Part shown: piece by piece, positions 35,188 to 53,768 of the stretch
Position numbering within the stretch: the stretch's first letter is position 1
How the letters are laid out: each line of letters opens with the position of its first letter
IMG/VR virus record: IMGVR_UViG_3300040801_004532
Coordinates: 184,137-248,136 of that record
Strand: one strand, 5' to 3'
Length of the DNA: 64,000 nucleotides
Translations under genes and position numbers: made by a program
Notes under the pieces: model-generated
What the model saw: only the letters and a program-made list of their open reading frames with translations
What the model was told of the DNA's origin: nothing
The model's database searches: none

Positions 35188-36351
35188 TTATTTTATTTTG
35201 CTTGCTTTCTTCTGTAGTTTAGCAATCTTTGCATTGACTCCCGCTTTACATTTTGCGGGATTTTTAGTTCTGGCACACATCGCTTCCGCTTTCTTCATGT
35301 TAGCAATTTGTGAACCAATTGCAGCTTTCTTTGCTTGCGCCATACATGCAGCTTTTTCTGCTCCCTTCTTACCAGCACATGCTTTTGCCGCAGCACTCAA
35401 TTTTGACTTATATAATTTATATGCACCATACGCAATTAAAGCCAGCAGCGCCGCAGCACCAATGGCTTGACCACCTGGAGTTTGAGCAAACTCCTTTGAT
35501 TTTTCAACAGCTGCTCTTGCTGCACTAACAGCATCTGGATAGCTAGCTTTAATTTTATTCATCAAACCAGTAAGTGCTTCTTGCCCCTTTCCAGCTAATC
35601 TCTTTCCAGCAGCTGCAACTTTTTCAGCACCACTCTGTGGACCTCTCATCGCTCCTTTAATTGATGCAGCTTGTGAGGCAGATAAACTTCCCTGACCTCC
35701 AGTGCCGACACCACCTTTTTGAGCTATCATTCTTTGAAGTGAGGGGTCTGTTTTCTTTAAGAACTGTCCCCACCCAATTTTACTTTTTTGAGCGGCAGCC
35801 TTAGATGCTGCTGCAATAGCATCTTTGGCATCTGCGCCCTTAGCAGCAGCTCGTCTAAGAGTTGAGGCAACAGCTTCTGGTGTTGCGCCAGCAGCTTTAG
35901 CAATTTTTCTTGCCCAAGTTGTAACATCAGTTGGAGTCAATGGTGCCTCGCTTATAATCATACTACCAGCTGGAATATCATGAGATTCAGTTATGAACTC
36001 AAGTACCGGCTTTGCTGAAGAGTAAAATGGATAAACTGAGTTGACTTCACAAAGAAAATTAGCTATAAATCCTGTATCTAGTTTTTCAATGATTGGACTA
36101 TTAATTACTTGCTCTCTTAGTTCAGAGAATACTTTTAACTCATCAAGAGTATCAAATTTATTTTCTGGTAATTCATTTCTTACAATCATTGAAATAATTT
36201 GATAATCGCTAGCTTCATTAAAAATAAAGTTTTTTGTTAGCTCTTTCTGTTGTTTATCCAAAGATGATGCATCAACTAAAAGCGATAAAACTTCTCGACA
36301 AATCACGAGAAATTGTAGTGACTCGCTAACTTTACCATTCGTGATAAACAT
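35188..36351 (-). CDS. Ala/Lys-rich probable virion-internal protein, paralog 1 of a 4-Cys 'KNPxKC' family
   Basis: Shares N-terminal (NFIFNEASDYQI) and C-terminal (C..C..C-x2-TKNPAKC) motifs with 52200-52766 and 53271-53768. Confidence 0.6.
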   Translation of the reverse strand: MFITNGKVSESLQFLVICREVLSLLVDASSLDKQQKELTKNFIFNEASDYQIISMIVRNELPENKFDTLDELKVFSELREQVINSPIIEKLDTGFIANFLCEVNSVYPFYSSAKPVLEFITESHDIPAGSMIISEAPLTPTDVTTWARKIAKAAGATPEAVASTLRRAAAKGADAKDAIAAASKAAAQKSKIGWGQFLKKTDPSLQRMIAQKGGVGTGGQGSLSASQAASIKGAMRGPQSGAEKVAAAGKRLAGKGQEALTGLMNKIKASYPDAVSAARAAVEKSKEFAQTPGGQAIGAAALLALIAYGAYKLYKSKLSAAAKACAGKKGAEKAACMAQAKKAAIGSQIANMKKAEAMCARTKNPAKCKAGVNAKIAKLQKKASKIK

Positions 36352-36375
36352 TTTTAATCCTCCGTTCTTTAATTA

Positions 36376-37098
36376 TTAAGTAGCTGAATTAACTGCATTG
36401 CCATTTGAATCAACAATGCTATTTTTCATTGCGTAAACATTATCAGCTAGACTTTGGCATTTTGTTTTTACCCAATCTTCATGCCAAATATAGTCTACGT
36501 TAAATTCAATTTCAACATCAAGACGCCCAACAGTTTCAACATCACTTGTAAATAGATCTTGTGGGTCCTTAGTTGGGAATACACCATCATATGCTGCATA
36601 GTATTCAACTGTTTTTGCATCAGGAGCTGTAGTCCAGTAATACATAATACATGCATATGTTCCTTTGGAATACCCTGAAAGTTGTTCCCCGTCTACAAGG
36701 TCAGTTGTACCTGATCTGTAGTCTCTAATCATCTTGATCCAACCATGGAAAATATTTAGCATTGGGGTTCCGTTAAATTCCAAGAATTTAACTGAAACTG
36801 AGTTTCCATAGTCAATGTTACCTGGTACTGCCCACTTGATTCCGCCCAATCCTGTAAACTCAACCTTGTTTAGAGTTCCTCCTGGAGGTGTAACAGAAAG
36901 ACAAGCTCCAGCTAATAGGTTTCCGATGTCTCCCACGCTTGGTAATTTTGTGTAATCCGGTAATGCAGAAGGTAATTTTGCAAAGTATACAAAATGATAC
37001 CCTGTAACATATGGATCAGCAACACCGGCAACTGTTCCACCAAAGTTACGAGTTGCAAGGTTATTTGGTACAGCGGCGAATGAATTTTTTATTGCCAT
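36376..37098 (-). CDS. Tail tube protein (T4 gp19-like)
   Basis: CLSVTPPGGTLNKVEF..VPGNIDY..SVKFLE..WIKMI..FPT..VEF.VD. Confidence 0.8.
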   Translation of the reverse strand: MAIKNSFAAVPNNLATRNFGGTVAGVADPYVTGYHFVYFAKLPSALPDYTKLPSVGDIGNLLAGACLSVTPPGGTLNKVEFTGLGGIKWAVPGNIDYGNSVSVKFLEFNGTPMLNIFHGWIKMIRDYRSGTTDLVDGEQLSGYSKGTYACIMYYWTTAPDAKTVEYYAAYDGVFPTKDPQDLFTSDVETVGRLDVEIEFNVDYIWHEDWVKTKCQSLADNVYAMKNSIVDSNGNAVNSAT

Positions 37099-37119
37099 TA
37101 TACTATTCCTCCGAGTTGA

Positions 37120-37644
37120 TTAACCAAATTTCATTCTCTTTTTAATTGTTTTAAAGACAGCGTCCCAATTGCCATCTTTAATAAATATCGCTTTATCATC
37201 AATGTAAAAATCAGCAGCCAATTTTTCTGCTGTAACTCGATCAAAATAAATACCGTTTAATTTTAACCAATTCTCAACACTTCTAATTTGATCTATGTGA
37301 TCTCCACCCGTCTCTTTTGCATTTTCTTCTGAAGCCCTTGTTGTAAAGATCACAATTTCATATCCATTATTCTTTAGCCAATCAATCACTTTTTTCGCCC
37401 CTTCAAATGGATCATCATAAATTGTACCATCTTCGTAACCTTTTGAGTACTTATGAATCGTTCCATCTAAATCAATCATCGCTCTTCGACTCATTTGTTC
37501 TACCATAATCCAGTTTTCATTTGGGTAAGCTACCGAGATGACTTGTCTTTTCTTTTTCTTTTTCTTTGTTGGAAACGAATCAATAGCAAAACCACCAACG
37601 GCTTCTGTTCCTTGTAACTTTTCTAGGTATTTTTTTATGTTCAT
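37120..37644 (-). CDS. HAD-superfamily phosphatase with N-terminal extension
   Basis: MIDLDGTI (motif I), IFTTR, K..ADFYIDDK. Likely start ATG 37644 after AAGGA; track start is 37671. Confidence 0.8.
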   Translation of the reverse strand: MNIKKYLEKLQGTEAVGGFAIDSFPTKKKKKKRQVISVAYPNENWIMVEQMSRRAMIDLDGTIHKYSKGYEDGTIYDDPFEGAKKVIDWLKNNGYEIVIFTTRASEENAKETGGDHIDQIRSVENWLKLNGIYFDRVTAEKLAADFYIDDKAIFIKDGNWDAVFKTIKKRMKFG

Positions 37645-37676
37645 TTCTATCCTTATCGGTTGGATACTCATTTTTA

Positions 37677-37688
37677 TTTTGTTCTAAA
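37677..37688 (-). promoter_or_regulatory. Motif A (TTTAGAACAAAA), candidate late promoter
   Basis: Intergenic, 33 nt upstream of the HAD/tube operon. Recurs at 44638, 48085 and 56137. Confidence 0.55.
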
Positions 37689-37721
37689 AAATTACTAATG
37701 TCTCAAGTTTAAAATGACTAA

Positions 37722-37743
37722 AACTATATATATAAATTAGTGA
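37722..37743 (+). promoter_or_regulatory. Motif B (AACTATATATATwAATTAGTGA), candidate early/middle promoter
   Basis: 21/22 identity with 45734-45755. Both copies end 40-41 nt before the first ATG of a + strand islet. Confidence 0.6.
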
Positions 37744-37783
37744 TATAGATGTTTTAACTGTTTTTTTTAAGGAGGTGTACACG

Positions 37784-38158
37784 ATGAGTGCGAGGAGTGG
37801 TTTTTCAATTGGTCAAATAGTTCTATTTATTTTAGCTTTATTATGGTTTTTTGATGATGATGATAAAGAAAACAAAGCGGATGTTAATTCAGATGAGCCA
37901 GAAATAACTCAATCTATTAAGGAAACAGCAGACTCATTAGTAGGCACTATAAATGAAACAGCAGACAAGATTAATGTGGCAGCAGATAATTTTTTAAAAT
38001 CAAAAGAACCCGATAGTAAAGAAACCGAAGGCGAAAAGAAAAATGAAACCCCGCCTGATATAATCGACGACAAAAAAGAAGAAGAAAAACAACTCGATCC
38101 CCCCTTAATTGAGGAAATGGAAAAGGAACAAGAATCTCTAACCGGCAGAAAGCTTTAA
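37784..38158 (+). CDS. Membrane-anchored acidic hypothetical protein
   Basis: Hydrophobic N-terminus IGQIVLFILALLWFF, SD AAGGAGG, ATG at 37784. Confidence 0.6.
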   Translation: MSARSGFSIGQIVLFILALLWFFDDDDKENKADVNSDEPEITQSIKETADSLVGTINETADKINVAADNFLKSKEPDSKETEGEKKNETPPDIIDDKKEEEKQLDPPLIEEMEKEQESLTGRKL

Positions 38159-38167
38159 AGGAGCACT

Positions 38168-39193
38168 ATGGAACAAGCAAGAGAATTGGTAATATTCGAT
38201 AAAATATTTAGAAATGAAAATTATGAACTTTTTTTTAATACCATGTCTGGATTCGAAATTCTTCGTGGTGTAAATGGGAAAGAAGATCCGTTTTGGTTAG
38301 AACTTCCATCTCTATTAGACATTGGAATTATGGGAACCTGCTATCACAATTGTCCATTTTGTTATCAAGGACATATTAAAGAACCAAATATGACTTTTGA
38401 AAATTACAAATGGATAATTAACCAGGTGAAACATCATACAAATCAGGTTGCTCTTGGTGGACGAGGGGACCCAAATAAACATAAGGACTTCAGAAAAATA
38501 GTTGAATATTCCAGGAATAGTGGTGTGGTTCCGAACTATACAACAAGCGGAATCGATCTGACGGATGAAGAAGTGGAGACATCAAAACTATGTGGTGCAA
38601 TAGCCGTGAGTGACTACGAAAAACCCTTTACATACCAAGCCTTAAAAATGTTCATGGATGCAGGTATAAAAACAAATATCCATCAAATTTTCTCATCAGG
38701 AACATTTACAAAATCAATGAAAATAATCTATGGTTATAGTCCATGGCAAAGTCAAAAAAGAGAAAAGGTTGACACTGAAAGATTGAATGCTGTAGTGTTT
38801 CTCCTATTCAAACCTCAAGGAGAAGGAAAAAATATACCAGCATTTATTCCAAGCGAATATCAACTAAAGACATTTTCAGAGATGGTATTAAAAGGCAAAG
38901 CAAAATTCAAAATTGGTATGGATAGTTGTTTGGTTAATCATTTAATAAGATATGCAACTCCAACGGATGGACAAATGATGTCACTTGATACCTGTGAGGG
39001 TGCAAGAATGTCAGCATATATTTCACCTGATTTAAAAATGATGCCTTGCAGCTTTTCAAGAAAAAGCAGTGGAGTACAACTATCAAATAAAAAATCAATA
39101 TCTAATGTATGGGAAAATTCAAGGATTTTCAAATCCTTCAGAAGTAAACTGAAAAGAAAACCGGATAAATGTCCAATAAATTTTGAGGTATAA
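38168..39193 (+). CDS. Radical SAM/SPASM-like protein
   Basis: CYHNCPFC, QVALGG, NYTTSG, C-terminal CEGA..MPCSF..CP. Confidence 0.9.
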   Translation: MEQARELVIFDKIFRNENYELFFNTMSGFEILRGVNGKEDPFWLELPSLLDIGIMGTCYHNCPFCYQGHIKEPNMTFENYKWIINQVKHHTNQVALGGRGDPNKHKDFRKIVEYSRNSGVVPNYTTSGIDLTDEEVETSKLCGAIAVSDYEKPFTYQALKMFMDAGIKTNIHQIFSSGTFTKSMKIIYGYSPWQSQKREKVDTERLNAVVFLLFKPQGEGKNIPAFIPSEYQLKTFSEMVLKGKAKFKIGMDSCLVNHLIRYATPTDGQMMSLDTCEGARMSAYISPDLKMMPCSFSRKSSGVQLSNKKSISNVWENSRIFKSFRSKLKRKPDKCPINFEV

Positions 39194-39195
39194 CC

Positions 39196-39726
39196 ATGAA
39201 GATAAAAACAGACTTTGTAACAAACTCATCTAGTTCATCATTTATAGTTGTTTTTCCTGAAAGGGTAAAATCATTAAACCAAGTAGAAAGATTCATTTCC
39301 CAAGGATATTCAAACACGATATTGAGGGACATAAAAAATCAACAGGCATTAAATGTTAAAAGAAACAGGGAAAAGATAAAAAAACTCTTGATAAAAGAAT
39401 TATGTGATGGAAGTTTAATGGGCAATTATATAGTCCCAGAAAAGGTTGAATATTCTGATTTTCAGAATAAGTTTTGCAAAAGAGAAGGAATTAGCACCAA
39501 AGAATTATATGACAACAAACAATGGTATCACTTATTTCGTGATGAATTTAATCGGGAACAAACAAGGTGGGCAACAGATGCAGCAAACAAGTTTCTTGAA
39601 ACACTTGAAGAAAACTGTTATGTCTATTATTTCCACTATGGAGACGAAGGAGGGGGACTCTACGCACAAATGGAACACGGAGATATCTTCAGAAAGCTCC
39701 CCAATATCAGAATCAGTCACCATTGA
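39196..39726 (+). CDS. Second 'MKIKTDFVTNSSS' family protein
   Basis: N-terminal 13 residues identical to ORF 617-1000. Confidence 0.7.
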   Translation: MKIKTDFVTNSSSSSFIVVFPERVKSLNQVERFISQGYSNTILRDIKNQQALNVKRNREKIKKLLIKELCDGSLMGNYIVPEKVEYSDFQNKFCKREGISTKELYDNKQWYHLFRDEFNREQTRWATDAANKFLETLEENCYVYYFHYGDEGGGLYAQMEHGDIFRKLPNIRISHH

Positions 39727-39772
39727 AAATCAAAACAAAAAACACAAGTTAGATTTTACAGACGGGAATGAA

Positions 39773-40279
39773 ATGGTTTATGAGACATATTGTGCAGTTG
39801 AACTCGTTGCTATTCCGCCAAATTTTGACATTAAAAGTCATTTAACTATGCGAGAACAAGCAGGAATATTCGAATATACAAATGTTAGTATTAAACATCT
39901 TGAAGGCATTTCAATGGGCGTACAAAATACACCTGTTTTTACCCTTCTTAATAATCCAAATGTAGCCTTACAATCTATGATATATTTCTTATATATATTA
40001 GATCAATTAGGATTTATTATAAGAGGAATAGGTAGTGGTTTCCATATGGCTATGCATGGTAATTATGAACAATTGTTACGATCATATGAGCGTGCAAGGG
40101 GAACTGTATATATCCAAAATCATAGAGCAGATACTATAAACTTTGCTATAATAAATATGATTCAAATTCTAAATAATGAAACAATTGAAAAAGCTATAAA
40201 AATCGCAGCTTGTGAATATAATGAACAGAAGCTAGCAACCGAAAAAATAGAATCATTACTCCAAACAACAGGAGGATAG
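39773..40279 (+). CDS. Hypothetical protein
   Basis: Likely start ATG 39773, since the track start at 39446 overlaps the upstream gene by 280 nt. Confidence 0.5.
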   Translation: MVYETYCAVELVAIPPNFDIKSHLTMREQAGIFEYTNVSIKHLEGISMGVQNTPVFTLLNNPNVALQSMIYFLYILDQLGFIIRGIGSGFHMAMHGNYEQLLRSYERARGTVYIQNHRADTINFAIINMIQILNNETIEKAIKIAACEYNEQKLATEKIESLLQTTGG

Positions 40280-40281
40280 AA

Positions 40282-40785
40282 ATGATGCGACGAAGAACAT
40301 TTTGGATTTGTATGGCTTTCATTTCCTTGTGTCTTGTTTTACTCTTCGTTCCGCTTTGTTATAGCGAAACGGACGCGACAAGGATTGGTAAGGTCAAATG
40401 TGTGAACCGAGCCATTCAGGGAGATGATTATATTGAAGTATTGAGAATGGTAGACCCAGATAACCCATTTGTATCAATCTTTTTCACTCGGATAGACTCT
40501 GGAAAAGTATTTGCTATGGCAAACCCGAGTAATACATCTATAGCAACTCGCCTTGTTGGAGAAATTCCAATCGACAAAAATGGTAAAAGGATCATTGATA
40601 CATCTCCTGCTGTCCTTGGAAAATTATCACAATCAATTGGAACCAAGGAGATGAATATAGCTCGTTTCTATGACAAAGAAAAGGATGCATTAGTCTATAT
40701 CGTTTATTCAACAAAATGGCTGGAAGGATCCTTGAAACATTCAATCTCCGTTGTACCATTAGGGAATCCACTAACCTCAAAATAA
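40282..40785 (+). CDS. creA: CreA family periplasmic protein
   Basis: Signal peptide, DPDNP.VS.F, PSNTSIA.R..G.I, YDKEKDALVYIVYSTKWLEGSLKHSISVVP closely follow the CreA consensus. Confidence 0.8.
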   Translation: MMRRRTFWICMAFISLCLVLLFVPLCYSETDATRIGKVKCVNRAIQGDDYIEVLRMVDPDNPFVSIFFTRIDSGKVFAMANPSNTSIATRLVGEIPIDKNGKRIIDTSPAVLGKLSQSIGTKEMNIARFYDKEKDALVYIVYSTKWLEGSLKHSISVVPLGNPLTSK

Positions 40786-40797
40786 GGAAACGAAACA

Positions 40798-41364
40798 ATG
40801 AAAAAAGTGTTACTGGTCGGAATAGCGATGATGTTAATTTTCGTTTCTTCGTCTTATGCAGATTGGTTAGATTTTGATCGTCATGGAACAAGAATTTTCT
40901 ATGGTGTCAATGATATGACGACAATTGGGCCGGATCCTTCAGAAACTGACAAATATTCGTGGGGATCGGTCAGTTATCTTTTAGAAAAAGATATATATAA
41001 ATGGTTATCAATTCAAACGACTCTTGGTGTTGGTTATTTAGAATCAGATATCCAATCCACTCCATCCATCGAAGGACGTATCTTATTAAAGGCTCATTAT
41101 AGTATCTTCCATATATCAATTGGGGGTGGGCCTGCTTATTTGTTTGAAACAGATGATATTCCTGATTTGGCAGATTCACCAATATACGGCATTATATCAG
41201 GAGAAGCAGGAATTCATTTTATCGAAGAAGAAAAGTTTGATGTTAGAGCAGGGTATGCTGTTGAACATCTGTCCTCTCCCCTTCACCAAGGAAAAAAAGG
41301 TGATAATCAAGATCCGGGGTGGAATGTTGGAGGAATCGTCATACAAGCAACGTGGAGGTTCTGA
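40798..41364 (+). CDS. Outer-membrane beta-barrel, PagL/acyloxyacyl hydrolase (lipid A deacylase)-like
   Basis: Signal peptide (SYA-D), alternating amphipathic strands, EHLSS His-Ser dyad, PGWN, C-terminal WRF. Confidence 0.65.
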   Translation: MKKVLLVGIAMMLIFVSSSYADWLDFDRHGTRIFYGVNDMTTIGPDPSETDKYSWGSVSYLLEKDIYKWLSIQTTLGVGYLESDIQSTPSIEGRILLKAHYSIFHISIGGGPAYLFETDDIPDLADSPIYGIISGEAGIHFIEEEKFDVRAGYAVEHLSSPLHQGKKGDNQDPGWNVGGIVIQATWRF

Positions 41365-41609
41365 TGAATGTGGCTCAATGGTTGGCCAAAATAGTAGAAG
41401 AAAAACATAAACACTGCTGTTATAACGGAGGAAAAAAGCATAATTATAAATCCATATGGGAACGACACCCAAGTGGGTTTAAGGCTAGGGAGTGGGAAGG
41501 AACAGTAGCTCAATTTGAATCCTTGGCATTTACAGAAGTTTATATGGGCGAAGTTTGTCGGTGGTGCGGTGATATAATTCATCGAGATGAACTAAAAGAA
41601 AAAACTTAG
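41364..41609 (+). CDS. Small Cys/His-containing hypothetical protein
   Basis: TGATG overlap with upstream stop, SD GGAGG, HCC..H and CRWCG. Confidence 0.55.
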   Translation: MNVAQWLAKIVEEKHKHCCYNGGKKHNYKSIWERHPSGFKAREWEGTVAQFESLAFTEVYMGEVCRWCGDIIHRDELKEKT

Positions 41610-41617
41610 TTCTAACG

Positions 41618-41661
41618 AAAAAAAAGAGTCGAAGGGATTTCTCCCCCCGACTCTTTTTTTT
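41618..41661. terminator. Bidirectional Rho-independent terminator between convergent operons
   Basis: A8-GAGTCG..CGACTC-T8. Confidence 0.85.
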
Positions 41662-41689
41662 GCCTGGCAGTATAGGCTACTAGGCTGGT

Positions 41690-43684
41690 TTATTCGATGA
41701 AGAAGTTTAACAAGATCTGTTCTGTTGTTCTTGTTGGTTGTAGGATTATATCAACATGGAATTTCTTTGTTTTACGTTCATAATCTGTAGCTCCTACATC
41801 AACAGAGTAACTATCAAGACCACGTCTGTTTTTAATATCTTCAAGGAAATCAACAATAGCTGCTGAAACCTGTCCCCATGTAATTTGGTCATTTTGCTCA
41901 AAAATAAAGTTTCGGCAGAATTGCTCAATTGCTCTCTTTGCATAAAGAACAAGTCTTACAATATTTAGATCTTGAAGAGCACTTGCTCTAGCTTGTGAGG
42001 TCAATTGTCCCCAAACAACATACCCATTTGAAAACTTAACAATTGGGTTTAGTTGTTTTAGATATAGCTGATCTCTTTGAGATAGTCTTGGATTAAATCT
42101 CAACTCTTTAATTGAATCAATTGCAGCTCTTTGGAAACCAGCCGCTGCAAACCACAGTTCAGAAACTGTATCATTTCTTGGAATAATATATGACATATGG
42201 TAAATAGGTGAAAACCAAATATCATCTCCTGTAAATGGATCAGATACTTTATTAAATGGTTCATATAATGCAACAAAATAGTTATTGAATACATTAGTAT
42301 CTTGACGAGTTGAAATTGCATTATTGACAGTTGAGTTGTCACCATTGTCCATGATACCAACACAATCTCGTCTGGTTTGACATAGTGTGCTGATAGCTGT
42401 TTTTACATCTGCTGGATAACCAGCATCATAAACTAGGGTGAAGTAAATATTTTCAGTATCAAGTATTTGGTCATCAATAAGTCCAGAATAAGCTTGTTCC
42501 AATAGGGTTGGAGCTGAATATGGGTACCAAGTTCCACCTGGATCTGTTGCTGGAGTTTCAATATTTAAAGAACCATTTGGTTTTCTTAGACTTCCTTCTG
42601 ATCCTTTCTTTAAAGGTTTTGGATCTCCAGAAATAAATGGAGTGGCAACACTTGCATATGACTCTTTAATTAGGTAAGTAATATCTGAGTTTACATCAAA
42701 TGATGTAGTATTTCCATTCCATCCTGTTGTTGCTCCAGTTAGATTTCTATCTGAGAAGACATTGATTTCATCACCAACACTTCCCCCTGAAGCTCCCAAC
42801 CAACCCCAAATCTCATTTCCTCTTCCATCCTTTGCAATTACTACATAATTTGCGTTTCCTGTTTCTGGATTTGTTTCCCAGTCAGAGAAATCCTGCTTAT
42901 TATCTGTAATCTTAGCAGAACCAGCTGTTAAAGTAACAGAAACAGTACCAATGTTATTATCGTAATTCTTTGCGATTAAATAATATCCATCAGTATAATC
43001 TTCATTTGATAGAACCATTTCAGCCCGTAATACAGTTGAATAATTTTCAAGAATGTTTGCGATGAAAATTGAATCGCCCGCTGAATCAACTGCTTCTGGA
43101 TCAAATGAAACTTCAAAAGACTCAATGATAACATCTTCGCCATCTGATTGTTTTTCATAAACATCTAGAACATAGACGCCATTTAATGTTGGGTTTGAAT
43201 GCTCCGTAAATCTTACACCAAGAGCGTTATAGTAATCACCTCTACCAATTGGTCTGATGATACAAAGAGGTTTTACATCCCCTGATGTTTCAAGTTGTGT
43301 TTTAATATCGTTTTCATCATTTAGTGTTGCGTCGTAATCAACCCAAACAACTGTTGTAGCATCTGCTGGGGCAAGTCTTGTGTTGATTCTGATAAACGAA
43401 TATGCAGCATCATCTGGAAGCAATCTCATCCAGTATAAACCACCAGACTCACCTAGATGATTATAAACGACATATGGAGCTTGACCATAATTCTTTGTAT
43501 AATCTTTAATATCCGGTTCGCCCCACTCTGCAATAAAGTCAGATCTTGAACCTACAAAGATTAATTCGTTATCTCTTCCTTTTCTTGTAAAACCACTTAT
43601 AAATCCAATGGTTGAAGGAACCACTTGGATATATTGTGATAAATCTATGATTTTGGTAAAAACACCTGGCGAAACATTTGCCAT
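41690..43684 (-). CDS. Contractile tail sheath protein
   Basis: SPGVFTKIID, GDYYNALGV, YDAG, ELWFAAAG..RA, RDQLYLKQLNPI, LNIVRL, FIFEQND. Confidence 0.95.
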   Translation of the reverse strand: MANVSPGVFTKIIDLSQYIQVVPSTIGFISGFTRKGRDNELIFVGSRSDFIAEWGEPDIKDYTKNYGQAPYVVYNHLGESGGLYWMRLLPDDAAYSFIRINTRLAPADATTVVWVDYDATLNDENDIKTQLETSGDVKPLCIIRPIGRGDYYNALGVRFTEHSNPTLNGVYVLDVYEKQSDGEDVIIESFEVSFDPEAVDSAGDSIFIANILENYSTVLRAEMVLSNEDYTDGYYLIAKNYDNNIGTVSVTLTAGSAKITDNKQDFSDWETNPETGNANYVVIAKDGRGNEIWGWLGASGGSVGDEINVFSDRNLTGATTGWNGNTTSFDVNSDITYLIKESYASVATPFISGDPKPLKKGSEGSLRKPNGSLNIETPATDPGGTWYPYSAPTLLEQAYSGLIDDQILDTENIYFTLVYDAGYPADVKTAISTLCQTRRDCVGIMDNGDNSTVNNAISTRQDTNVFNNYFVALYEPFNKVSDPFTGDDIWFSPIYHMSYIIPRNDTVSELWFAAAGFQRAAIDSIKELRFNPRLSQRDQLYLKQLNPIVKFSNGYVVWGQLTSQARASALQDLNIVRLVLYAKRAIEQFCRNFIFEQNDQITWGQVSAAIVDFLEDIKNRRGLDSYSVDVGATDYERKTKKFHVDIILQPTRTTEQILLNFFIE

Positions 43685-46824: not shown

Positions 46825-46832
46825 GCTTTAAA

Positions 46833-48041
46833 TTATTCAAATAATGGTTTGTCAATAACAGGTCTTTCGATTGAGTGTTTATAGTTCTTCCAATCATCTT
46901 CAATTGTTTGTGGCCACATATAAAATTTTGCATCAAAGTTTTTAATCAGCCCAGCTTTTGAAAGTTCTGCTTTAACAATATAACCACCAACTAGAGGATG
47001 TAATCCTTTTCGTTTTAGATAGCTTGTTTGTCCTTCAAAACAACCACATTGCATACCAAAAATTGAACCGAACATTGCTTGCATTTGAATATGTAAATGA
47101 CCTGCCAATAGAAATCTCACACTTGGTTTATCTTTTACATCTCTTGAAATATTTGCAAGTTCAGTATATGCAATTTGTTCAACGCCCTTTTGAATACGAT
47201 ATGAATAAGAATACGGCACACCTCCAGAAGGATGCCAAAGCTTCATATCTACACCAGGAAGGATTGGAATATCTGCATCATCAAATCCAATGTAGTGAAC
47301 ATCTGATCTTTGTGCCTCAATTGCTAATAAAGGATTATGCCCTCCGCCTCTTTTAATAAATGAATAATCGTGGTTACCACCAAGCATGTACCATTCAAAA
47401 CCTCTTGGTAAATTAACAATTACAGAGTCCTCTTGTTCTTCAGCCGATAATGCATAAACCTCAAATTGTTGGCCGGGATAAACATTATAACCAGCGCAAA
47501 CATCGCCAGGTGTAAAAATATATTTTACTCCCTTTTTCCTACATATTTCACAAAATTCATTTAACGCTGTTAGTTGACATTCTTTTGAACCAAAATGTAA
47601 ATCGGATGCAACACCAAAAATAATTTCTTTGTCTTCAAGGGGATCATTAATTGGATCTCCTTCCGATGCAACATCAGAACTTAAAATGATATTTTTATCA
47701 TCACAAATAATTTCATATCCCTGTTTTCTGAAATAATCAATCAATTCAAAAATTTCACCAGGCGAACAGCTTAACTCATCACATAATGTTTCACCTCTGA
47801 CTGTTTTTCTTTTTTCTAGTATTGTAATAAATGCCTGATCAATAGACTCTTTTTCTTCAACGCCTCCATAATCTTCATCAGTTAAATGTTCCCTTTTTAC
47901 CTTTGAAATATATTTATAAAATGTTTTGATATTGCTCCCATAGCCAAACTCTTTTTGTGCTCGATGATAAATATTTTTTGTCTCTGCGCCGTTTAATATT
48001 TCCTGTTTTACAAATTCAATTAAACCAGGATATAAAGTCAT
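46833..48041 (-). CDS. Calcineurin-like metallophosphoesterase with N-terminal HTH-like domains
   Basis: SDLHFGS, GDVCAG, GNHD, HPSGG, GHLH. Likely start ATG 48041 after GGAGG. Confidence 0.85.
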   Translation of the reverse strand: MTLYPGLIEFVKQEILNGAETKNIYHRAQKEFGYGSNIKTFYKYISKVKREHLTDEDYGGVEEKESIDQAFITILEKRKTVRGETLCDELSCSPGEIFELIDYFRKQGYEIICDDKNIILSSDVASEGDPINDPLEDKEIIFGVASDLHFGSKECQLTALNEFCEICRKKGVKYIFTPGDVCAGYNVYPGQQFEVYALSAEEQEDSVIVNLPRGFEWYMLGGNHDYSFIKRGGGHNPLLAIEAQRSDVHYIGFDDADIPILPGVDMKLWHPSGGVPYSYSYRIQKGVEQIAYTELANISRDVKDKPSVRFLLAGHLHIQMQAMFGSIFGMQCGCFEGQTSYLKRKGLHPLVGGYIVKAELSKAGLIKNFDAKFYMWPQTIEDDWKNYKHSIERPVIDKPLFE

Positions 48042-48084
48042 CAAAAATTCCTCCACACATTAGATTATTAAAAACCTATCATTT

Positions 48085-48096
48085 TTTTGTTCTAAA
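48085..48096 (-). promoter_or_regulatory. Motif A copy
   Basis: TTTAGAACAAAA, 44 nt upstream of ATG 48041. Confidence 0.5.
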
Positions 48097-48158
48097 TTGG
48101 CAGATTAATATCTTGATATACTTAGAAAGGAATTATAGGAGGGTTTAAAACTATTGTA

Positions 48159-50948
48159 TTATAGAATTATTCTTTTGCCATTTTCTTGTAATAAATATTT
48201 GCCATTTTCTTGTAGTAAATAACCTGAAATTTCTTCAACTCTTATCGTAAAATAATCAAAATTATATGTACAATCGAATCTTCCTTCTTCATCAAAATCT
48301 CTAAATCCACCTGTTTGATAATAATCAAAACTATAAACAGGAGGAACATCTTCATCAGGAATTAACCATGAAATTTGATAATTATCTGTTGGAACTGAAG
48401 CTGACAATAATACAACAAATCTATCTTCATATCTCTTTTTAACAATTCCTGAAATTATAAACTCGCTGGTTGAATCTGTTGAAAGATTAATTAAAACTGG
48501 ATAATGAGTATGCGTAAGAGGACTATTTAAATAAACAGTTACTTCAGATAATCCTTGTGCAATATCTTCATTGCCATATTGCAAACCTTCACAAATAATC
48601 CATTCTAAATGATAATTTGTTGAATCCATCGGACCAGACAGATCCACTTCAAACTCATTGATACTTTTTCTTGTTACAGAATGTGAATATATAGCAGGAC
48701 TTGTATCTACTGTATTTACAAGTGAAACAAGAACGTTATAATTTGGTCCACATAAATTCGGTACTATAATTGTCTTTGAAGTATCCCCAATATTCAACGG
48801 AACTATCCCGGTTGTTGTAGAAGTGGTATCAACCAAAAACCAATCTAGATAATAATTGGGAGATGAAATCGAACCAGTAAAATCAACTGTAAAACTCGAT
48901 GTTTGTTTGCTAGTGATTATATAATCATAAACATACTGAACTTCATCTGGATTGTTGTTTCGTAAAGATGCAATAACTGTATAATTTAAATCAGGTTGTG
49001 GAGTATCAAATATTACTGTGGTTCCTGATACACCCTCTCTAATCTTATGAGAATATGGACCAAGTCTTACAAGGTTTGATATTTCTGATACAACAAACCC
49101 CGTACCATCAGAAGGGGGACAATGTAAACTATCATAGATAGTTTCCTCATAAGTGATTTCAACATTATCCTCACCGCTAACAACAGCACCATAATCAAAA
49201 GCTGAACCACAATCAAATGTATCCCTTGAATAATATCTAGCTACAGATGTTGAGTCGCTGCAAGTTATTGTACTAATTAAACTCCAAAAAGAACCATATG
49301 ATGCTCCTGATGGAGGTTTAGTTTGATCATTAGATACATGTAATTGAGTACAAATATATTGATTCCCATTTAGATCTGGGACAACATCATTTACGGCATA
49401 TGCGATACCAGCTTGCCATATCCCTCTCCAATTCATAGTTGCAGGAACTGCACCAGTAAAGGTTCTCTTACATTGAGCAACTAACTCATTATTACATAGA
49501 GTAACTGCTGTCGAATCAAGTGAAGGTTCTGGACAGCAAGGACTACTGTTACCTGTTATAAAGTCATGAACTGTTTGCTCAGCATAAAAATCAAATGCAT
49601 CTTCAACAATGATCGTATTTGGAACTCTACTTCTAACTTGAAGCTGTTCCAATAATAGAATTCTTGCTCGATAAGGTTTAAAGAAGTTAATTGCAGGTGC
49701 AAGAGTCTTGAAAAATTCTTGAACTCCAAATAAAATAAAACCGAAGTTTACAAAACCAAAACCAATATTAGCACGAACCCAAAGAGCCATATCCTTCAAA
49801 AGTGAGTATAGAACATCCAAGGGTTCCCCGGCCGAATCAAGCTGTGATTTAATATCAGGGGCTATAACGCCCAGCCAGTATTCTGCACTATTAGAATTTA
49901 CTAGAAAGTTGGTTGGTGTAGGACGAGTAAATTCGTCTAAGTATTGTTGGTATCTTTGTTTTTGATCTAGTCGGCTAGTTGGAACCACATTTATAATCGA
50001 ATCAAACTCAGCTTTGATTATTTCAGGATCTATGCTTGTTCCATCATAACATAGATAATCAGCACCCCATAATGGCAAGTCTTCACGTCCAACAGAAAAT
50101 TGTTTGTTGAACATATAAACAGCTGAGAGGTATAGTTCAAGAAAGCTTCTTAGTTCACCAATGTATGAGATTTCGGCTGAAGCAGTAGGAACAGAACCTG
50201 TTGATTGATAATAATCAAACTCATCTTGGCATCTTCGAACTATAGTCGACATCTCAAAATTATCAACTTCAACAATAGGTTGTACACCAATATAAGGAGT
50301 TTTAGATGGAAGATTTATTTTAGTTGTATTATGTAACTGAATGATTTGTTCAGCCGTATATAACCAATGTGGATCTCCCTGAGTTAAATTTGCATAAGGG
50401 AATGCAATATCAATTGGGTTTGTGGTTGTACCAGCAACAACTTTTCCATCAAAGTAAAGAGTGTTTTGATTTAACTTTTTAAGGAAAAATTCATAAATAT
50501 CAACTTCTGTAACACCATAATATTGAAGGACATCAACTAATGATTGTGGTGTTCCCTTTACCTTATATAGATTAACAAGATCAAGGAAAAACTGAATTTT
50601 CTGTTCTAGAGGGTTTTCATCAAAATCTCTTAGGCTTGTTGAATGTGGATAACCAAAGCTTCTAAACAACTCATCTAAATCGCTATTCGAAATTGAACGA
50701 ACATCGGATGCCCTTAGTGAAGATGTAGCCAAAGACCTATGTGAAGCAAATAGATCAATAATTAATCTTCTTAACCTATTATAATCAGTTGTTAAAAATG
50801 ATGATTGATCAACAACATTTGAGAAATAATCTTCTAATTTGGTCCTATCTGATTTTGCAATGGCATCCAACGCATCAGTTACATTACCTGTTCCACCACT
50901 AACTGACTTGAAAATCTCCCAAAAGAGATCTATTTTATCATATGCCAT
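48159..50948 (-). CDS. Large modular baseplate/tail protein (P2 gpI/gp7-like N-terminus, CBM-like module, three beta repeats)
   Basis: LYKVKGTPQS, WRGIWQAGIAYAVNDVV, three repeats ending YYLDW/YHLEW/YQISW, terminal YLLQENG x2. Confidence 0.6.
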   Translation of the reverse strand: MAYDKIDLFWEIFKSVSGGTGNVTDALDAIAKSDRTKLEDYFSNVVDQSSFLTTDYNRLRRLIIDLFASHRSLATSSLRASDVRSISNSDLDELFRSFGYPHSTSLRDFDENPLEQKIQFFLDLVNLYKVKGTPQSLVDVLQYYGVTEVDIYEFFLKKLNQNTLYFDGKVVAGTTTNPIDIAFPYANLTQGDPHWLYTAEQIIQLHNTTKINLPSKTPYIGVQPIVEVDNFEMSTIVRRCQDEFDYYQSTGSVPTASAEISYIGELRSFLELYLSAVYMFNKQFSVGREDLPLWGADYLCYDGTSIDPEIIKAEFDSIINVVPTSRLDQKQRYQQYLDEFTRPTPTNFLVNSNSAEYWLGVIAPDIKSQLDSAGEPLDVLYSLLKDMALWVRANIGFGFVNFGFILFGVQEFFKTLAPAINFFKPYRARILLLEQLQVRSRVPNTIIVEDAFDFYAEQTVHDFITGNSSPCCPEPSLDSTAVTLCNNELVAQCKRTFTGAVPATMNWRGIWQAGIAYAVNDVVPDLNGNQYICTQLHVSNDQTKPPSGASYGSFWSLISTITCSDSTSVARYYSRDTFDCGSAFDYGAVVSGEDNVEITYEETIYDSLHCPPSDGTGFVVSEISNLVRLGPYSHKIREGVSGTTVIFDTPQPDLNYTVIASLRNNNPDEVQYVYDYIITSKQTSSFTVDFTGSISSPNYYLDWFLVDTTSTTTGIVPLNIGDTSKTIIVPNLCGPNYNVLVSLVNTVDTSPAIYSHSVTRKSINEFEVDLSGPMDSTNYHLEWIICEGLQYGNEDIAQGLSEVTVYLNSPLTHTHYPVLINLSTDSTSEFIISGIVKKRYEDRFVVLLSASVPTDNYQISWLIPDEDVPPVYSFDYYQTGGFRDFDEEGRFDCTYNFDYFTIRVEEISGYLLQENGKYLLQENGKRIIL

Positions 50949-51619
50949 TATGGTTCATCCCCACAGTTAATATCAAACAGAACATTTTGGTTTGTAAGAT
51001 ATAGAAAATACTCATCCATCAATTTAGCCTCAAAACAACTTGCTAACAACGTACCATCTGTTACCAAATCTGAAGCACAGTATATGTCAATATTTTCGTA
51101 TATTTTTAGATCTAGATATAGATAAATTAATTTTGATAACGGAGTGTTTAATGAATCAAATGTAGCATTAACAATTACTATTCCCGCTGTTGCATCCACA
51201 ATTAAGTCAACCGCTGTCGAATCAATTGATGCAGTAGTATCAATAAATACGACAGATGTTGAATCAATTCTATAATTTAAAAGCGCATCCAACATTACAA
51301 AATCATGGTCTTTTAGGTTAAAAATATTATTCCCAGTTTCTCCTGGAACTAAATATTTAGATCCTGGGTAAATCATCAATCTTTGCCGTGTGAGAGTTGG
51401 CCAACATTGATTTCGTGATTCTGCTTTATATAAATAATTATAGTAATCATATGGATAATCATCATCACATAAAAGTTGAACGACAGAGGCTGGAGTCAAG
51501 AAGTTTTCTGGCACGGGAACCGGCGCAGGAATTTCATATCTATTTATAATTGAGGTAGTTACAAATTTGTAGAACCAGGTTTGGAACTCGGGTATAAGCT
51601 CCGAATTAGCTACTGTCAT
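50948..51619 (-). CDS. Hypothetical probable virion protein
   Basis: Coupled by one-base overlaps to both neighbours. Confidence 0.5.
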   Translation of the reverse strand: MTVANSELIPEFQTWFYKFVTTSIINRYEIPAPVPVPENFLTPASVVQLLCDDDYPYDYYNYLYKAESRNQCWPTLTRQRLMIYPGSKYLVPGETGNNIFNLKDHDFVMLDALLNYRIDSTSVVFIDTTASIDSTAVDLIVDATAGIVIVNATFDSLNTPLSKLIYLYLDLKIYENIDIYCASDLVTDGTLLASCFEAKLMDEYFLYLTNQNVLFDINCGDEP

Positions 51620-52182
51620 TATTCCCTCACGTCTGTTTGGATTAGGTCAGCTGTGCTCATCATATCTAAAATATGAACGAAAAGGGTTGTGGGATTGAAA
51701 TCTCTAAAATCAAATTCTTTTCCTCTCACATCTGTACTCCATTGACCAGAGTGAAATCTGACAGCTTCTTCCAAAATAAGGAATTGCCCTTCTGTTAATA
51801 GTTTGGTAAATGTTCCTTTATTTTGGGCGATCATATCCGCAGCTTGTTTATCGTGGGTATAATCGGTATGTTTTCTAGTCCCTAGATTTCCATACTTTAG
51901 AGAATCATGAAGAGCTACAGCAATCAACAGCGTATCTGCATCTGTTGTTTTTGTCTCTATATTAAATAACCTCATGATTTTAGAACAAGCATATAGCATA
52001 TGATAAACATGCTCTGCCTGTGATGGTACTTCACCGTTTTTCTTCTTATGATATTTTCCGGTTGATGAAGTTGGTTTGTCCCAAATATCAGGAAGGATGC
52101 TATCAATCCCCTTCCACAATTTGAATCCTTTTTCTGTTAAATTTGTTTCAAGAAGTTCGAGAATCTTTCCTTTATATGTCAA
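51619..52182 (-). CDS. HD-domain phosphohydrolase
   Basis: SSTGKYH, EHV, ALHDSLK, HSGQW, HILD. Confidence 0.85.
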   Translation of the reverse strand: MTYKGKILELLETNLTEKGFKLWKGIDSILPDIWDKPTSSTGKYHKKKNGEVPSQAEHVYHMLYACSKIMRLFNIETKTTDADTLLIAVALHDSLKYGNLGTRKHTDYTHDKQAADMIAQNKGTFTKLLTEGQFLILEEAVRFHSGQWSTDVRGKEFDFRDFNPTTLFVHILDMMSTADLIQTDVRE

Positions 52183-52199
52183 TTTTATTCCCTTTCTAT

Positions 52200-52766
52200 T
52201 TACTTTTCTGATTGTGTTGTTACAGAAATAGTGGCTCGTTTTTTAAGATCTTCAATTCTACCTTGAAGTTCTCTTAGATCCTCTGTCCATTTTTCAATTT
52301 TGGCCTGTCCCTTTTCTTTACATTTTTCTGGATTTTTTGATTTAGAACAATTTTTCATTTGTCTTTTGATAAGATTTATTAATTTATTATATTTAGTCAT
52401 TTTTGCTCTAATCAAACACATATCTCTAGCTCTTCCTGATGAAAATACCCCACATTTTCTTGATGCCTTTGAGAAAGCACCACGAATAGCTCTATAAGCT
52501 ACCCACCCTGGAGGAGACAGTAAAAACATTCCAAAAACTGTTTTTAAAAGACCTTCATTTAATTTATTTAATTCAAATCTCTCATTTACTATCTCTTCTG
52601 CTTGCTCGTCTAATTTTGTTATTTTTCCATCAAGTAGAAATGCTTTAATTTGTGCTTCAGATGCTTCTTTTTGTAGCCAATTCAGAAGCTGAAGTTTTGC
52701 TGATTTTGATAACTCACTTTCTGTAACTATTATTCCTGACAACAATGTTAGTTCTTTTTTATCCAT
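52200..52766 (-). CDS. 4-Cys 'KNPxKC' family paralog 2
   Basis: KLDEQAEEIVNERF identical to paralog 3, plus CSKSKNPEKC. Confidence 0.65.
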   Translation of the reverse strand: MDKKELTLLSGIIVTESELSKSAKLQLLNWLQKEASEAQIKAFLLDGKITKLDEQAEEIVNERFELNKLNEGLLKTVFGMFLLSPPGWVAYRAIRGAFSKASRKCGVFSSGRARDMCLIRAKMTKYNKLINLIKRQMKNCSKSKNPEKCKEKGQAKIEKWTEDLRELQGRIEDLKKRATISVTTQSEK

Positions 52767-52794
52767 TTTTTTAACCCTCTTATTTTATTATATA

Positions 52795-53259
52795 TTATGG
52801 TGGTGGCAATGCTTTATACTCAGGATGCAACTTTCTAAAATTTTCTTTTTGTTCAGGAGGAAGTTGTATATAGAAATCAAATACTTCTTTTGTGATATAA
52901 ACCTCCTTTTCGGGCGGGGCTTTTATACTATCCATAATCTTTTTAGAATCGCTTCCGGCTTCTTTTAAAGCTTCTTTAACCTTCTTGTCTGTAAGCAAAT
53001 CCCTTATCGCCTCTTGATTTTGTTCAATTGCTTCTTGTTGTTTTGAGTTAAATTGCTTTAATGTTTTTAACTCATCTCTATCTTTTTCGATCATAAGTTG
53101 AAGAGTCTGGTTATCAACTTTCTTATTTAATTCCTCTGCAATTCCTTTATATACAACCCCAACCAACGAAAATATCACAGCAGCAATAATTGGTGTAATA
53201 ATCGAAACATTTTTAAACCAAGGTTTCTTTGGTGGAGGTTCATTTTTCTTCCAGAACAT
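52795..53259 (-). CDS. Single-TM coiled-coil protein (possible lysis accessory)
   Basis: TM segment IITPIIAAVIFSLVGVVY, followed by heptad-rich region, near holin. Confidence 0.45.
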   Translation of the reverse strand: MFWKKNEPPPKKPWFKNVSIITPIIAAVIFSLVGVVYKGIAEELNKKVDNQTLQLMIEKDRDELKTLKQFNSKQQEAIEQNQEAIRDLLTDKKVKEALKEAGSDSKKIMDSIKAPPEKEVYITKEVFDFYIQLPPEQKENFRKLHPEYKALPPP

Positions 53260-53270
53260 CTTGCCCTCAC

Positions 53271-53768
53271 TTAGTCCATTGTTTTTTCCATTCTAGCAAT
53301 TTTCTTAGATAGTTTAGCTTTACACTTTTCAGGATTTTTAGTTTGATCGCATCTTGCCAGTAATTTCTTAAGTGCTTCTAGTTTTGCTTTAGCTTTAAAT
53401 TTGCTAATGCATCGTTGTCTATCTTCACCAGATCTTCCAGCACAGGCACGCCCTGCTTTTGACATATAAGTCTTATAAATATTTTTTGCCATTAAAAGAC
53501 CAGTAGCCCCAAACGCGGCCACGGTCATACCAAGCCATGCTGTCACAGGATCAAACTCAAGAATAGCAAATCGTTCGTTTACAATCTCTTCTGCCTGCTC
53601 ATCCAATTTAACAATCCTGCCATCTAACACCAAAGCTTTCACTTGTGCATCAGTTGCTTCATTCTGAATAAAATTTAAAAGTTGATGTTTTGCTTGTTTG
53701 CTTAACTCAGAAACAATGACAGCTTCTGCAGCAAACAGCCGTAATTCTTTATCCATGTTATCCTCCAT
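53271..53768 (-). CDS. 4-Cys 'KNPxKC' family paralog 3
   Basis: ELSKQAKHQLLNFIQNEATDAQVKA, CDQTKNPEKC. Confidence 0.65.
   Translation of the reverse strand: MEDNMDKELRLFAAEAVIVSELSKQAKHQLLNFIQNEATDAQVKALVLDGRIVKLDEQAEEIVNERFAILEFDPVTAWLGMTVAAFGATGLLMAKNIYKTYMSKAGRACAGRSGEDRQRCISKFKAKAKLEALKKLLARCDQTKNPEKCKAKLSKKIARMEKTMD

What the first reader, a model, noticed from the sequence alone, without database searches (positions are those of the whole stretch)
35188..53768. Three dispersed paralogs with a propeptide-like N-domain, hydrophobic helix and 4-Cys KNPxKC domain
Seen: ORFs 35188-36351, 52200-52766 and 53271-53768 share an N-terminal helix (L.K..K.QL.NF/W...EA.D/E.QI/V), and two of them share the identical KLDEQAEEIVNERF. 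All have a hydrophobic stretch followed by S(K/A)A...C-x(10-11)-C...C-x2-(T/S)KNP.KC in a very basic C-terminus. The acidic N-part ends near LNE/ILE/ISE. Known: T4 and phiKZ prohead proteases cut after Glu and remove propeptides from head-internal proteins. Inference: a family of capsid-packaged, possibly membrane-inserting ejection proteins with disulfide or Zn-stabilised tips.
Basis: partly seen in the sequence, partly recalled or inferred. Interest (0 to 1): 0.62.

Follow-up and report, generated by a model that had tools for sequence, protein, structure and literature searches.

The report
Protease-processed accessory virion protein family
The three ORFs belong to a large, unannotated jumbo-phage gene family whose acidic N-terminal part looks like a capsid-targeting propeptide cut by the T4-type prohead protease, leaving a small, very basic, cysteine-clamped three-helix protein that is probably packed in the head; this resembles known phage internal proteins and is not a new principle.

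Summary
P0001 (35188-36351), P0002 (52200-52766) and P0003 (53271-53768), all on the minus strand, are paralogs: P0002/P0003 E 2e-33, P0001/P0003 C-domain E 4e-15.

The 248-kb uncultured jumbo phage carries at least two more copies. These flank its gp21-like prohead protease in a T4-like head module.

The family is large, with 2132 clusters at 50% identity. It has no Pfam, PHROG, PDB or cultured-phage relative.

It is modular: an N-domain, a variable spacer, then a moderately hydrophobic helix and a basic hairpin domain with four Cys.

It is accessory. It fills three or four insertion hot-spots between conserved late genes with 0 to 8 copies.

[LIV]-x-E, the T4 gp21 cleavage motif, is twofold enriched in the N-parts (z about 17). 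It sits at the domain junction and is depleted in the C-domain. The predicted propeptide of the major capsid protein shows the same signature; tail proteins do not.

Best reading: head-internal proteins processed by the prohead protease, analogous to T4 IPs and to phiKZ/SPN3US paralog families.

Membrane insertion is unsupported, because the helix is only marginally hydrophobic. A single Cys4 zinc site is unlikely; two local Cys pairs fit better. A tape-measure role for P0001 is rejected. No experimental data exist.

The parts
35188..36351 (-). P0001, 387 aa: long family member (N-domain, Ala/Lys/Gly-rich spacer, C-domain)
   Evidence: ORF and translation. Orthologs of 260-501 aa occur in many viral contigs.
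35947..36351 (-). P0001 residues 1-135: acidic helical N-domain (net -10) with nine [LIV]-x-E sites, ending in ISE; predicted propeptide
   Evidence: The AF2 helices 8-122 are confident. Residues 115-135, which hold the site, have pLDDT below 50.
35191..35946 (-). P0001 residues 136-387: predicted mature part, net +34, no [LIV]-x-E site. The C-domain (residues about 296-387, window 35191-35466) has Cys at 325, 336, 359 and 368.
52200..52766 (-). P0002, 188 aa: short family member. The N-domain (residues 1-71, window 52554-52766) ends in LNE. The mature part (residues 72-188) is net +18.
53271..53768 (-). P0003, 165 aa (probably 161 aa, starting at 53756): short family member. The N-domain (residues 1-71, window 53556-53768) ends in ILE. 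The mature part (residues 72-165, window 53274-53555) is net +14.
   Evidence: The AF2 model has pLDDT 81.7: four N-terminal helices, a low-confidence linker at the ILE site, then a three-helix C-domain.

Best explanation
The three ORFs are members of an accessory family of precursor proteins for the phage head, variable in copy number.

Inferred mechanism:
1. The acidic helical N-domain acts like a long capsid-targeting sequence and brings the precursor into the prohead core.
2. The gp21-like prohead protease cuts after [LIV]-x-E, at the junction and at several sites inside the N-domain, so the propeptide is chopped up and lost.
3. A 94-252 residue, strongly basic mature protein stays with the packaged DNA. 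It consists of a moderately hydrophobic Gly/Ala-rich helix and two helical hairpins, each clamped by a Cys pair.
4. This protein is presumably ejected with the DNA.

Shown here: paralogy, modularity, genomic contexts, motif statistics, and the presence of the protease gene.

Inferred: packaging, cleavage and ejection.

Speculative: what the mature domain does. It could neutralise DNA charge like the T4 IPs, or act at the envelope.
For: 1. Head context. The genome has a T4-like head module: gp20-like portal, a 297-aa acidic protein, a paralog, an S77/gp21-like protease, a paralog, 96-aa and 137-aa proteins, and a gp23-like MCP. One relative has five copies in this module.

2. Cleavage motif. 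The last [LIV]-x-E lies just before the hydrophobic helix in the short members (LNE|G, ILE|F, LRE|G, VDE|V) and in the NUDIX fusions (LNE|V).
- N-parts hold 420 sites against 211 +/- 12 expected (z 17). C-parts hold 35 against 58.5 (z -3.4).
- This was replicated on 138 representatives at <=50% identity: 545 vs 298 (z 17.8) and 60 vs 94 (z -4).
- Control motifs are not enriched in the same way, and [SAG]-x-E is depleted.

3. Internal controls. MCP residues 1-70 show 2.37x with four conserved sites, and the rest of the MCP 0.75x. The protease shows 1.98x. Tail proteins range from 0.6x to 1.27x.

4. Structure. In the AF2 models the junction sites lie in low-confidence linkers.

5. Charge. N-parts are net -4 to -10 and mature parts +14 to +34, like the basic T4 IPs (PMC9026906).

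6. Modularity and plasticity. Architectures among the best hits are NC, NNC, CC and N-only, plus multi-module precursors with ISE|S between modules. Copy number is 0-8 per slot. This mirrors the processed head paralog families of SPN3US and phiKZ, whose ~125-aa propeptides carry several cleavage motifs (PMC5694885, PMC10052503).

7. Phage type. The phage has two sets of multisubunit RNA polymerase genes, as phiKZ/AR9-type phages do.
Against: - There is no proteomic, expression or structural data. The phage is uncultured, from freshwater sediment.
- The motif statistics use related sequences, so the z-scores are inflated. Only the ratios are robust.
- Most copies do not lie in the head module. 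They lie between a tail-tube-like gene and a gp26-like hub gene, or downstream of a DUF5675 / multi-TM gene pair.
- The head module of 11 of 13 protease-anchored relatives has no copy.
- There is no sequence or fold relation to any known internal protein.
- The protease match to Pfam S77 is below the gathering score (23.7 vs 27 bits). The PHROG match is strong (3e-23).
Confidence: 0.55

Rival explanations
1. These are membrane proteins of the infected cell: lysis regulators, spanin- or holin-like factors, superinfection exclusion proteins, or membrane anchors for head or baseplate assembly. They would be anchored by the hydrophobic helix, with the Cys domain oxidised in the periplasm.
For: - Every member has a hydrophobic stretch followed by YK.YK-type interfacial residues.
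- P0002 and P0003 lie just downstream of a DUF5675 protein (proposed C82-like lysin, bioRxiv 10.64898/2026.04.11.717860) and the multi-TM P0005. They are interleaved with the TM/coiled-coil protein P0004.
- Paired Cys, including twin Cx3C variants, are typical of oxidising compartments.
- The accessory, variable distribution fits exclusion or defence genes.
Against: - Hydrophobicity is below the usual TM threshold in most members: family median 1.5, with 40% at or above 1.6.
- The C-domain is extremely basic, so the positive-inside rule puts it in the cytoplasm. That conflicts with periplasmic disulfides.
- The opposite topology would export NUDIX domains.
- There is no signal peptide or lipobox.
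- The DUF5675-P0005 pair is conserved without any family member in 13 of 17 relatives.
- This reading does not explain why the [LIV]-x-E signature matches that of the MCP propeptide.
Confidence: 0.15
2. These are pure prohead core or scaffold helpers, positional analogs of T4 gp67/gp68/gp22. They would be wholly degraded or expelled at maturation, leaving nothing to be ejected.
For: Two paralogs flank the protease gene, as gp68 and gp22 flank gene 21 in T4 (PMC9026906). N-domain-only proteins of 74-100 aa exist.
Against: - The C-domain is depleted in cleavage motifs, and the predicted mature parts of four of the five paralogs have none; P0002 has one, at residue 166.
- The family is absent from the head module of most relatives. 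The conserved acidic 297-aa, 96-aa and 137-aa proteins are better scaffold candidates.
- Copy number of 0-8 is unlike an essential scaffold.
Confidence: 0.12
3. P0001-type members are tail-lumen or baseplate-hub proteins, such as a tape measure or pilot protein, loaded into the tail and not the head.
For: P0001 sits between a tail-tube-like gene and a gp26-like hub gene, followed by gp25-like and gp6-like genes. This is the classical tape-measure position. It has a helical Ala/Lys-rich body and a C-terminal hydrophobic segment. No tape measure was identified among the large ORFs scanned.
Against: - In 64 loci found through the hub protein alone, 22 have only 31-99 bp between the tube-like and hub genes. 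The others hold one or two members of 92-501 aa. FAM-anchored loci hold up to eight.
- An essential ruler would be single-copy, conserved and of fixed length.
- The same N- and C-domains occur in the head module.
- The AF2 model shows short helices and disordered stretches, not one long helix.
Confidence: 0.07

Closest known systems
T4 internal proteins IPI, IPII, IPIII and Alt, with their capsid targeting sequence, and the core proteins gp67/gp68 (PMC9026906)
   Same: - Small basic proteins.
- An N-terminal targeting propeptide removed by the gp21 protease after L/I-x-E.
- Core proteins cut at several sites.
- Genes next to gene 21, or dispersed and variable.
   Different: - No sequence similarity.
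- The propeptide here is 19-135 aa, against 10-20 aa in T4.
- The mature part has a conserved hydrophobic helix and four Cys.
- Packaging and cleavage are not shown here.
phiKZ/SPN3US head paralog family A (Pfam PF12699 phiKZ_IP: phiKZ gp93-95, gp162 and gp163; SPN3US gp53/gp54) and paralog family B (PMC5694885, PMC10052503)
   Same: - A jumbo phage with multisubunit RNA polymerases.
- Paralogous head proteins whose number differs widely between relatives.
- Long N-terminal propeptides with conserved N-termini and several protease motifs.
   Different: - PF12699 does not match these proteins or anything else in the genome.
- The motif is L/I/V-x-E, not A/S/G-x-E.
- The mature parts are much smaller.
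- The domain architecture is different.
Twin Cx3C / Cx9C helix-loop-helix proteins (small Tim and CHCH type); this comparison rests on my own knowledge
   Same: Antiparallel helices joined by a loop, with Cys at the helix ends. Six-Cys family variants carry Cx3C...Cx3C around the first loop.
   Different: The window proteins have one Cys on each side of each loop, not twin motifs. No homology was detected, and the redox state is unknown.

Membership tests
T4-type capsid-targeted internal or core proteins (functional class) | The genome encodes a gp21-like prohead core protease | tested here: met
   The 220-aa ORF at genome 32688-33350 matches phrog_207 head maturation protease at 3e-23. It matches PF03420 Peptidase_S77 at 3.8e-5, which is below the gathering score.
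T4-type capsid-targeted internal or core proteins (functional class) | An N-terminal propeptide ending in L/I-x-E, with further sites inside it | tested here: met
   The junction sites are ISE135, LNE71 and ILE71. The N-parts hold 4-9 sites; the mature parts hold none, except one in P0002 at residue 166. Across the family, sites are enriched 2x in N-parts and 0.6x in C-parts. This is a sequence-level test only.
T4-type capsid-targeted internal or core proteins (functional class) | Actual cleavage by the protease and presence of the mature form in virions | not testable with these tools
   The phage is uncultured and no proteome is available. No RNA run holds the locus.
T4 IPI/IPII/IPIII, gp67 and gp68 (homology) | Sequence similarity to the T4 proteins or their Pfam/PHROG families | tested here: not met
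   Pfam at E<=0.1 gave only a sub-threshold DUF1206 match for P0001 (E 0.0064, 17 bits against a cutoff of 26.2) and nothing for P0002 or P0003; at E<=0.01 it gave nothing for the two out-of-window paralogs. PHROGs gave no hit for any of them, at E<=0.01 for the window proteins and E<=0.001 for the two others.
phiKZ_IP (PF12699) inner body / ejection protein family | A match to the PF12699 profile | tested here: not met
   hmmscan of P0001-P0003 gave no match. A six-frame search of the whole 248-kb record gave none at E<=1.
Tail tape measure protein | A single, conserved, essential gene between the tube and hub genes, with length conserved among close relatives | tested here: not met
   The slot is empty in 22 of 64 hub-anchored loci. 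It holds 1-2 copies of 92-501 aa in the others and up to 8 copies in FAM-anchored loci.
Holins, spanins and other single-pass membrane proteins | A transmembrane segment of adequate hydrophobicity and a consistent topology | tested here: inconclusive
   The KD 19-residue maximum is 1.17-1.68 in the five paralogs, against 2.05-2.6 in P0004/P0005. Topology cues conflict, and no dedicated TM predictor was available.
Cys4 zinc-binding domain | Four Cys able to converge on one metal site | tested here: not met
   C2 and C3 are 22 residues apart (271 of 300 domains) on one helix of a three-helix bundle. Cys are lost in pairs, C1+C2 or C3+C4. Intersubunit sites are not excluded.

The most novel reading that the evidence does not exclude
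The family could be a modular capsid-delivery system. An acidic propeptide would mask a membrane-active, basic, Cys-clamped mini-protein and also target it to the prohead.

The prohead protease would arm it inside the head. On ejection into the oxidising periplasm the Cys pairs would lock the hairpins, and the Gly/Ala-rich helices would assemble into a conduit or remodel the inner membrane for entry of the jumbo genome.

The same C-domain or leader would carry enzymes such as NUDIX hydrolases into the host as cargo.
Probability: 0.12. Interest if true: 0.8.

Novelty: new variant of a known kind. Interest (0 to 1): 0.5.

Why it matters
- It would give a name and a testable role to a family of more than 2000 sequence clusters that no database annotates. 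The family is abundant in uncultured freshwater jumbo phages.
- It would extend the T4 and phiKZ paradigm (targeting propeptide plus prohead protease) to a distant clade, with a predicted T4-like cleavage rule.
- It points to insertion hot-spots where these phages swap head cargo, including enzyme fusions.
- Such cargo systems interest people who study host takeover and those who want to engineer protein delivery by phage capsids.

Tried and rejected
- Pfam and PHROG scans of all five paralogs: no credible family. The only match was DUF1206 for P0001, below the gathering score.
- megablast and tblastn against 50,697 cultured phage records: no match for the locus or for P0003. The MCP is only about 25% identical to phiR1-37 and AR9.
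- Species-representative bacterial and archaeal genomes: no relative.
- Foldseek against PDB and BFVD: nothing at E<=0.001.
- VIA-align wide search: only generic three-helix bundles, Z<=8.5, below the level that is meaningful for helical proteins.
- PDB sequence profiles: nothing.
- ESM Atlas: unnamed viral clusters only.
- Cluster look-up: no names.
- Context of a NUDIX fusion: no DNA was available and the context was uninformative.
- Pfam scan of ten long family members for cargo domains: nothing credible.
- Complex prediction with four copies of P0003 residues 72-165: no answer (score 0.00). This is not evidence either way.
- Tape-measure idea for P0001: rejected from slot occupancy.
- Lysis-cassette idea for P0002/P0003: weakened, because the slot is empty in most relatives.
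- Read laying was not used, because no RNA run holds the locus. No alternative genetic code was needed.
Full report
**Source.** The window is bases 184137-248136 of a 248,136-bp IMG/VR virus record, estimated 79% complete. GC content is about 34%. The locus occurs in freshwater-sediment metagenomes. The phage has T4-like gp23, gp20 and gp21 homologs. It also has a contractile tail with sheath, gp6-like, gp25-like and gp26-like genes. It carries two sets of multisubunit RNA polymerase beta/beta' genes. So it is a distant relative of phiKZ/AR9/phiR1-37-type jumbo phages. Its MCP is only about 25% identical to theirs.

**Observation.** The three ORFs are real, lie on the minus strand, and are clearly homologous. 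P0003 probably starts 12 nt downstream, at 53756.

A search of the whole genome found two more paralogs, of 180 and 130-136 aa. They lie directly on either side of the prohead protease gene. The module order is portal, acidic 297-aa protein, paralog, protease, paralog, 96-aa protein, 137-aa protein, MCP. A weak sixth candidate lacks the hydrophobic helix.

**Family.**
- No paralog has a credible Pfam or PHROG match; the only hit is a sub-threshold DUF1206 match for P0001.
- There is no match in cultured phages or in bacterial genomes.
- The word-indexed search found 45 relatives, and 38 IMG/VR loci hold the family.
- Because the family scans left the protein open, I ran the exhaustive profile search once. 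It found 2132 representatives at 50% identity with E<=1e-3, and 1277 at E<=1e-10.

**Modular architecture.**
- The P0003-type N-domain (four helices, about 70 aa) also stands alone as 74-100 aa proteins.
- That N-domain can be stacked in front of the larger P0001-type N-domain.
- It is also joined to other Cys-rich C-domains.
- The C-domain is fused to NUDIX hydrolases through an EEYLDHLNE|V linker. It also occurs in tandem, in multi-module precursors whose modules are separated by ISE|S.
- Among the 147 best hits the architectures are NC 102, CC 22, NNC 10 and N-only 6.

**Structure.**
- AF2 models P0003 at pLDDT 81.7. There are four N-terminal helices, then a low-confidence linker exactly at the ILE|FDP site. 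A long helix (74-108) follows, then a loop, helix 114-138, the KNP loop, and helix 146-164.
- In P0001 (pLDDT 69) the N-domain (8-122) and the C-domain (299-385) are confident. The region holding ISE135, and much of the Ala/Lys/Gly-rich spacer, is not.
- The C-domain aligns only to generic three-helix bundles.
- Across 342 C-domains, 300 keep all four Cys. The spacings are C1-x10/11-C2, C2-x22-C3 (271 of 300) and C3-x8-C4 (290 of 300).
- Substitutions remove C1+C2 together (7 cases) or C3+C4 together (4-8 cases) more often than a single Cys (4 cases). So there are two local pairs, each clamping one helix-loop-helix turn at opposite ends of helix 2.
- Six-Cys variants have Cx3C...Cx3C around the first loop.
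- This favours two disulfide-type clamps, or two half-sites, over one Cys4 zinc site. The redox state cannot be decided here.
- The hydrophobic segment is Gly/Ala-rich and only marginally hydrophobic.

**Cleavage signature.** T4 gp21 cuts after L/I-x-E. It removes the N-terminal targeting sequences of internal proteins and chops core proteins into fragments (PMC9026906).
- Here the last [LIV]-x-E upstream of the first Cys lies right at the start of the hydrophobic helix in the short members and in the NUDIX fusions. In the long members it lies at the end of the conserved N-domain.
- In 77 non-redundant members the N-parts hold 420 such sites against 211 expected from shuffles. The C-parts hold 35 against 58.5.
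- Control motifs in the N-parts gave these ratios: [LIV]E 0.79x, [LIV]..E 1.19x, E.[LIV] 1.39x, [LIV].D 1.16x and [SAG].E 0.70x. The genome-wide background for [LIV].E is 1.19x.
- An independent set at <=50% identity gave the same result.
- Internal controls: the first 70 residues of the MCP carry four conserved sites (2.37x), the rest of the MCP 0.75x, and the protease 1.98x. Tail and baseplate proteins range from 0.6x to 1.27x.
- The sequences are related, so the z-scores overstate significance. Still, the twofold ratio recurs in three unrelated N-terminal modules and in the MCP propeptide.
- Predicted products: N-parts with net charge -4 to -10, and mature parts of 94, 117 and 252 aa with net charge +14, +18 and +34.

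**Genomic context.** The family fills insertion hot-spots between conserved late genes.
- *Tube/hub slot.* In loci found through the gp26-like hub protein alone, the slot between the tube-like gene and the hub gene is empty in 22 of 64. It holds one C-domain gene in 29 and two in 8. Loci found through the family itself hold up to eight tandem copies. P0001 therefore cannot be the tape measure.
- *Head module.* In loci found through the protease, the core module is portal, acidic protein, protease, 96-aa protein, 137-aa protein, MCP. Family members are inserted in only 2 of 13 loci, besides this genome.
- *P0002/P0003 slot.* In loci found through P0005, the conserved order is 308-aa protein, DUF5675, P0005, HD protein, 223-aa protein, 929-aa protein. 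Family members, with or without P0004, are inserted between P0005 and the HD gene in 4 of 17 loci.
- *Fourth slot.* Between the gp25-like gene and the 224-aa gene lie six-Cys or duplicated variants in some relatives.

**Interpretation.** The combination points to prohead-protease substrates packed in the head. The elements are a gp21-like protease, a T4-type motif at the junction, a propeptide rich in sites, a mature part poor in sites, and acidic-versus-basic polarity. Conserved N-terminal modules on variable payloads and a highly plastic copy number add to this.

The pattern parallels T4 IPs with their CTS. It also parallels the processed paralog families of SPN3US and phiKZ. In SPN3US, gp53 and gp54 have about 125-aa propeptides with several motifs. 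Copy number in those families varies between phages (PMC5694885, PMC10052503). Membership in those families by homology fails, so this is an analogous but distinct family.

What the mature protein does is open. Its charge and its Ala/Lys-rich spacers suggest DNA association inside the head. The conserved Gly/Ala helix with its flanking YK.YK could mediate oligomerisation or membrane contact after ejection. I rate membrane insertion as speculative.

**Rivals.** I considered membrane proteins of the infected cell, pure scaffold helpers, and tail-lumen proteins. I rate them lower, for the reasons given in their entries.

**Limits.** There is no experimental evidence of any kind. The genome is incomplete and no tape measure was identified. 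The oligomer prediction gave no answer. The length window of the word-indexed search was covered by the exhaustive profile search, which has none.

Noticed in passing
window 9882-15544 (+); genome 155783-162880 (+) = L048:2783-9880: There are two separate pairs of large genes matching phage multisubunit RNA polymerase beta/beta' families. This suggests a virion and a non-virion RNAP, as in phiKZ/AR9-type jumbo phages.
   Followed up: partly
window 54398-54829 (-) and 53771-54394 (-): A DUF5675 protein (PF18925, E 2.5e-29) has been proposed elsewhere as a C82-like peptidase lysin. It is followed by the multi-TM P0005 (phrog_6637). The pair is conserved in about 30 related contigs and may be an endolysin-holin pair.
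   Followed up: partly
window 52795-53259 (-): P0004 has an N-terminal TM helix, a coiled coil and a Pro-rich C-terminus (i-spanin-like). It is an accessory gene present in only some relatives, and there it lies next to family members.
   Followed up: partly
window 56459-58351 (-): A 630-aa protein is built of many short repeats: up to 12 matched stretches to phrog_35701, and E 1e-139 to phrog_17273. Its function is unknown.
   Followed up: no
L007:3061-3876 (-) = genome 29061-29876: A homing-endonuclease-like gene (phrog_3339; DUF559 and REase_MTES_1575 domains) lies directly downstream of the major capsid protein gene.
   Followed up: no
genome 111662-112036 (-) = L050:1662-2036: This is a possible sixth, divergent paralog of 124 aa (profile E 2e-4). 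It has six Cys, including C-TTAPDPNR-C, a short LFE leader and no hydrophobic helix.
   Followed up: partly
P0041, P0045, P0046 (other contigs): These are NUDIX hydrolase domains fused upstream of an EEYLDHLNE|V leader and the family C-domain. They may be enzyme cargo released by the prohead protease.
   Followed up: partly
L031:120-7104 (+); P0090: L031 has eight tandem family genes in one tube/hub slot. P0090 is a 659-aa protein with three C-domains separated by ISE|S sites, which looks like a polyprotein precursor.
   Followed up: partly
window 51619-52182 (-), 50948-51619 (-), 48159-50948 (-): An HD-domain protein, a 223-aa protein and a 929-aa protein (weak CBM_5_12 and 'virion structural protein' matches) form a block conserved in relatives, downstream of the P0002/P0003 slot.
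   Followed up: no
window 37120-37671 (-): A HAD-like / phosphoheptose-isomerase-like protein (phrog_1238, 8e-22) is conserved directly upstream of the tail-tube-like gene in nearly all related loci. That is an odd position for a metabolic-looking gene.
   Followed up: no
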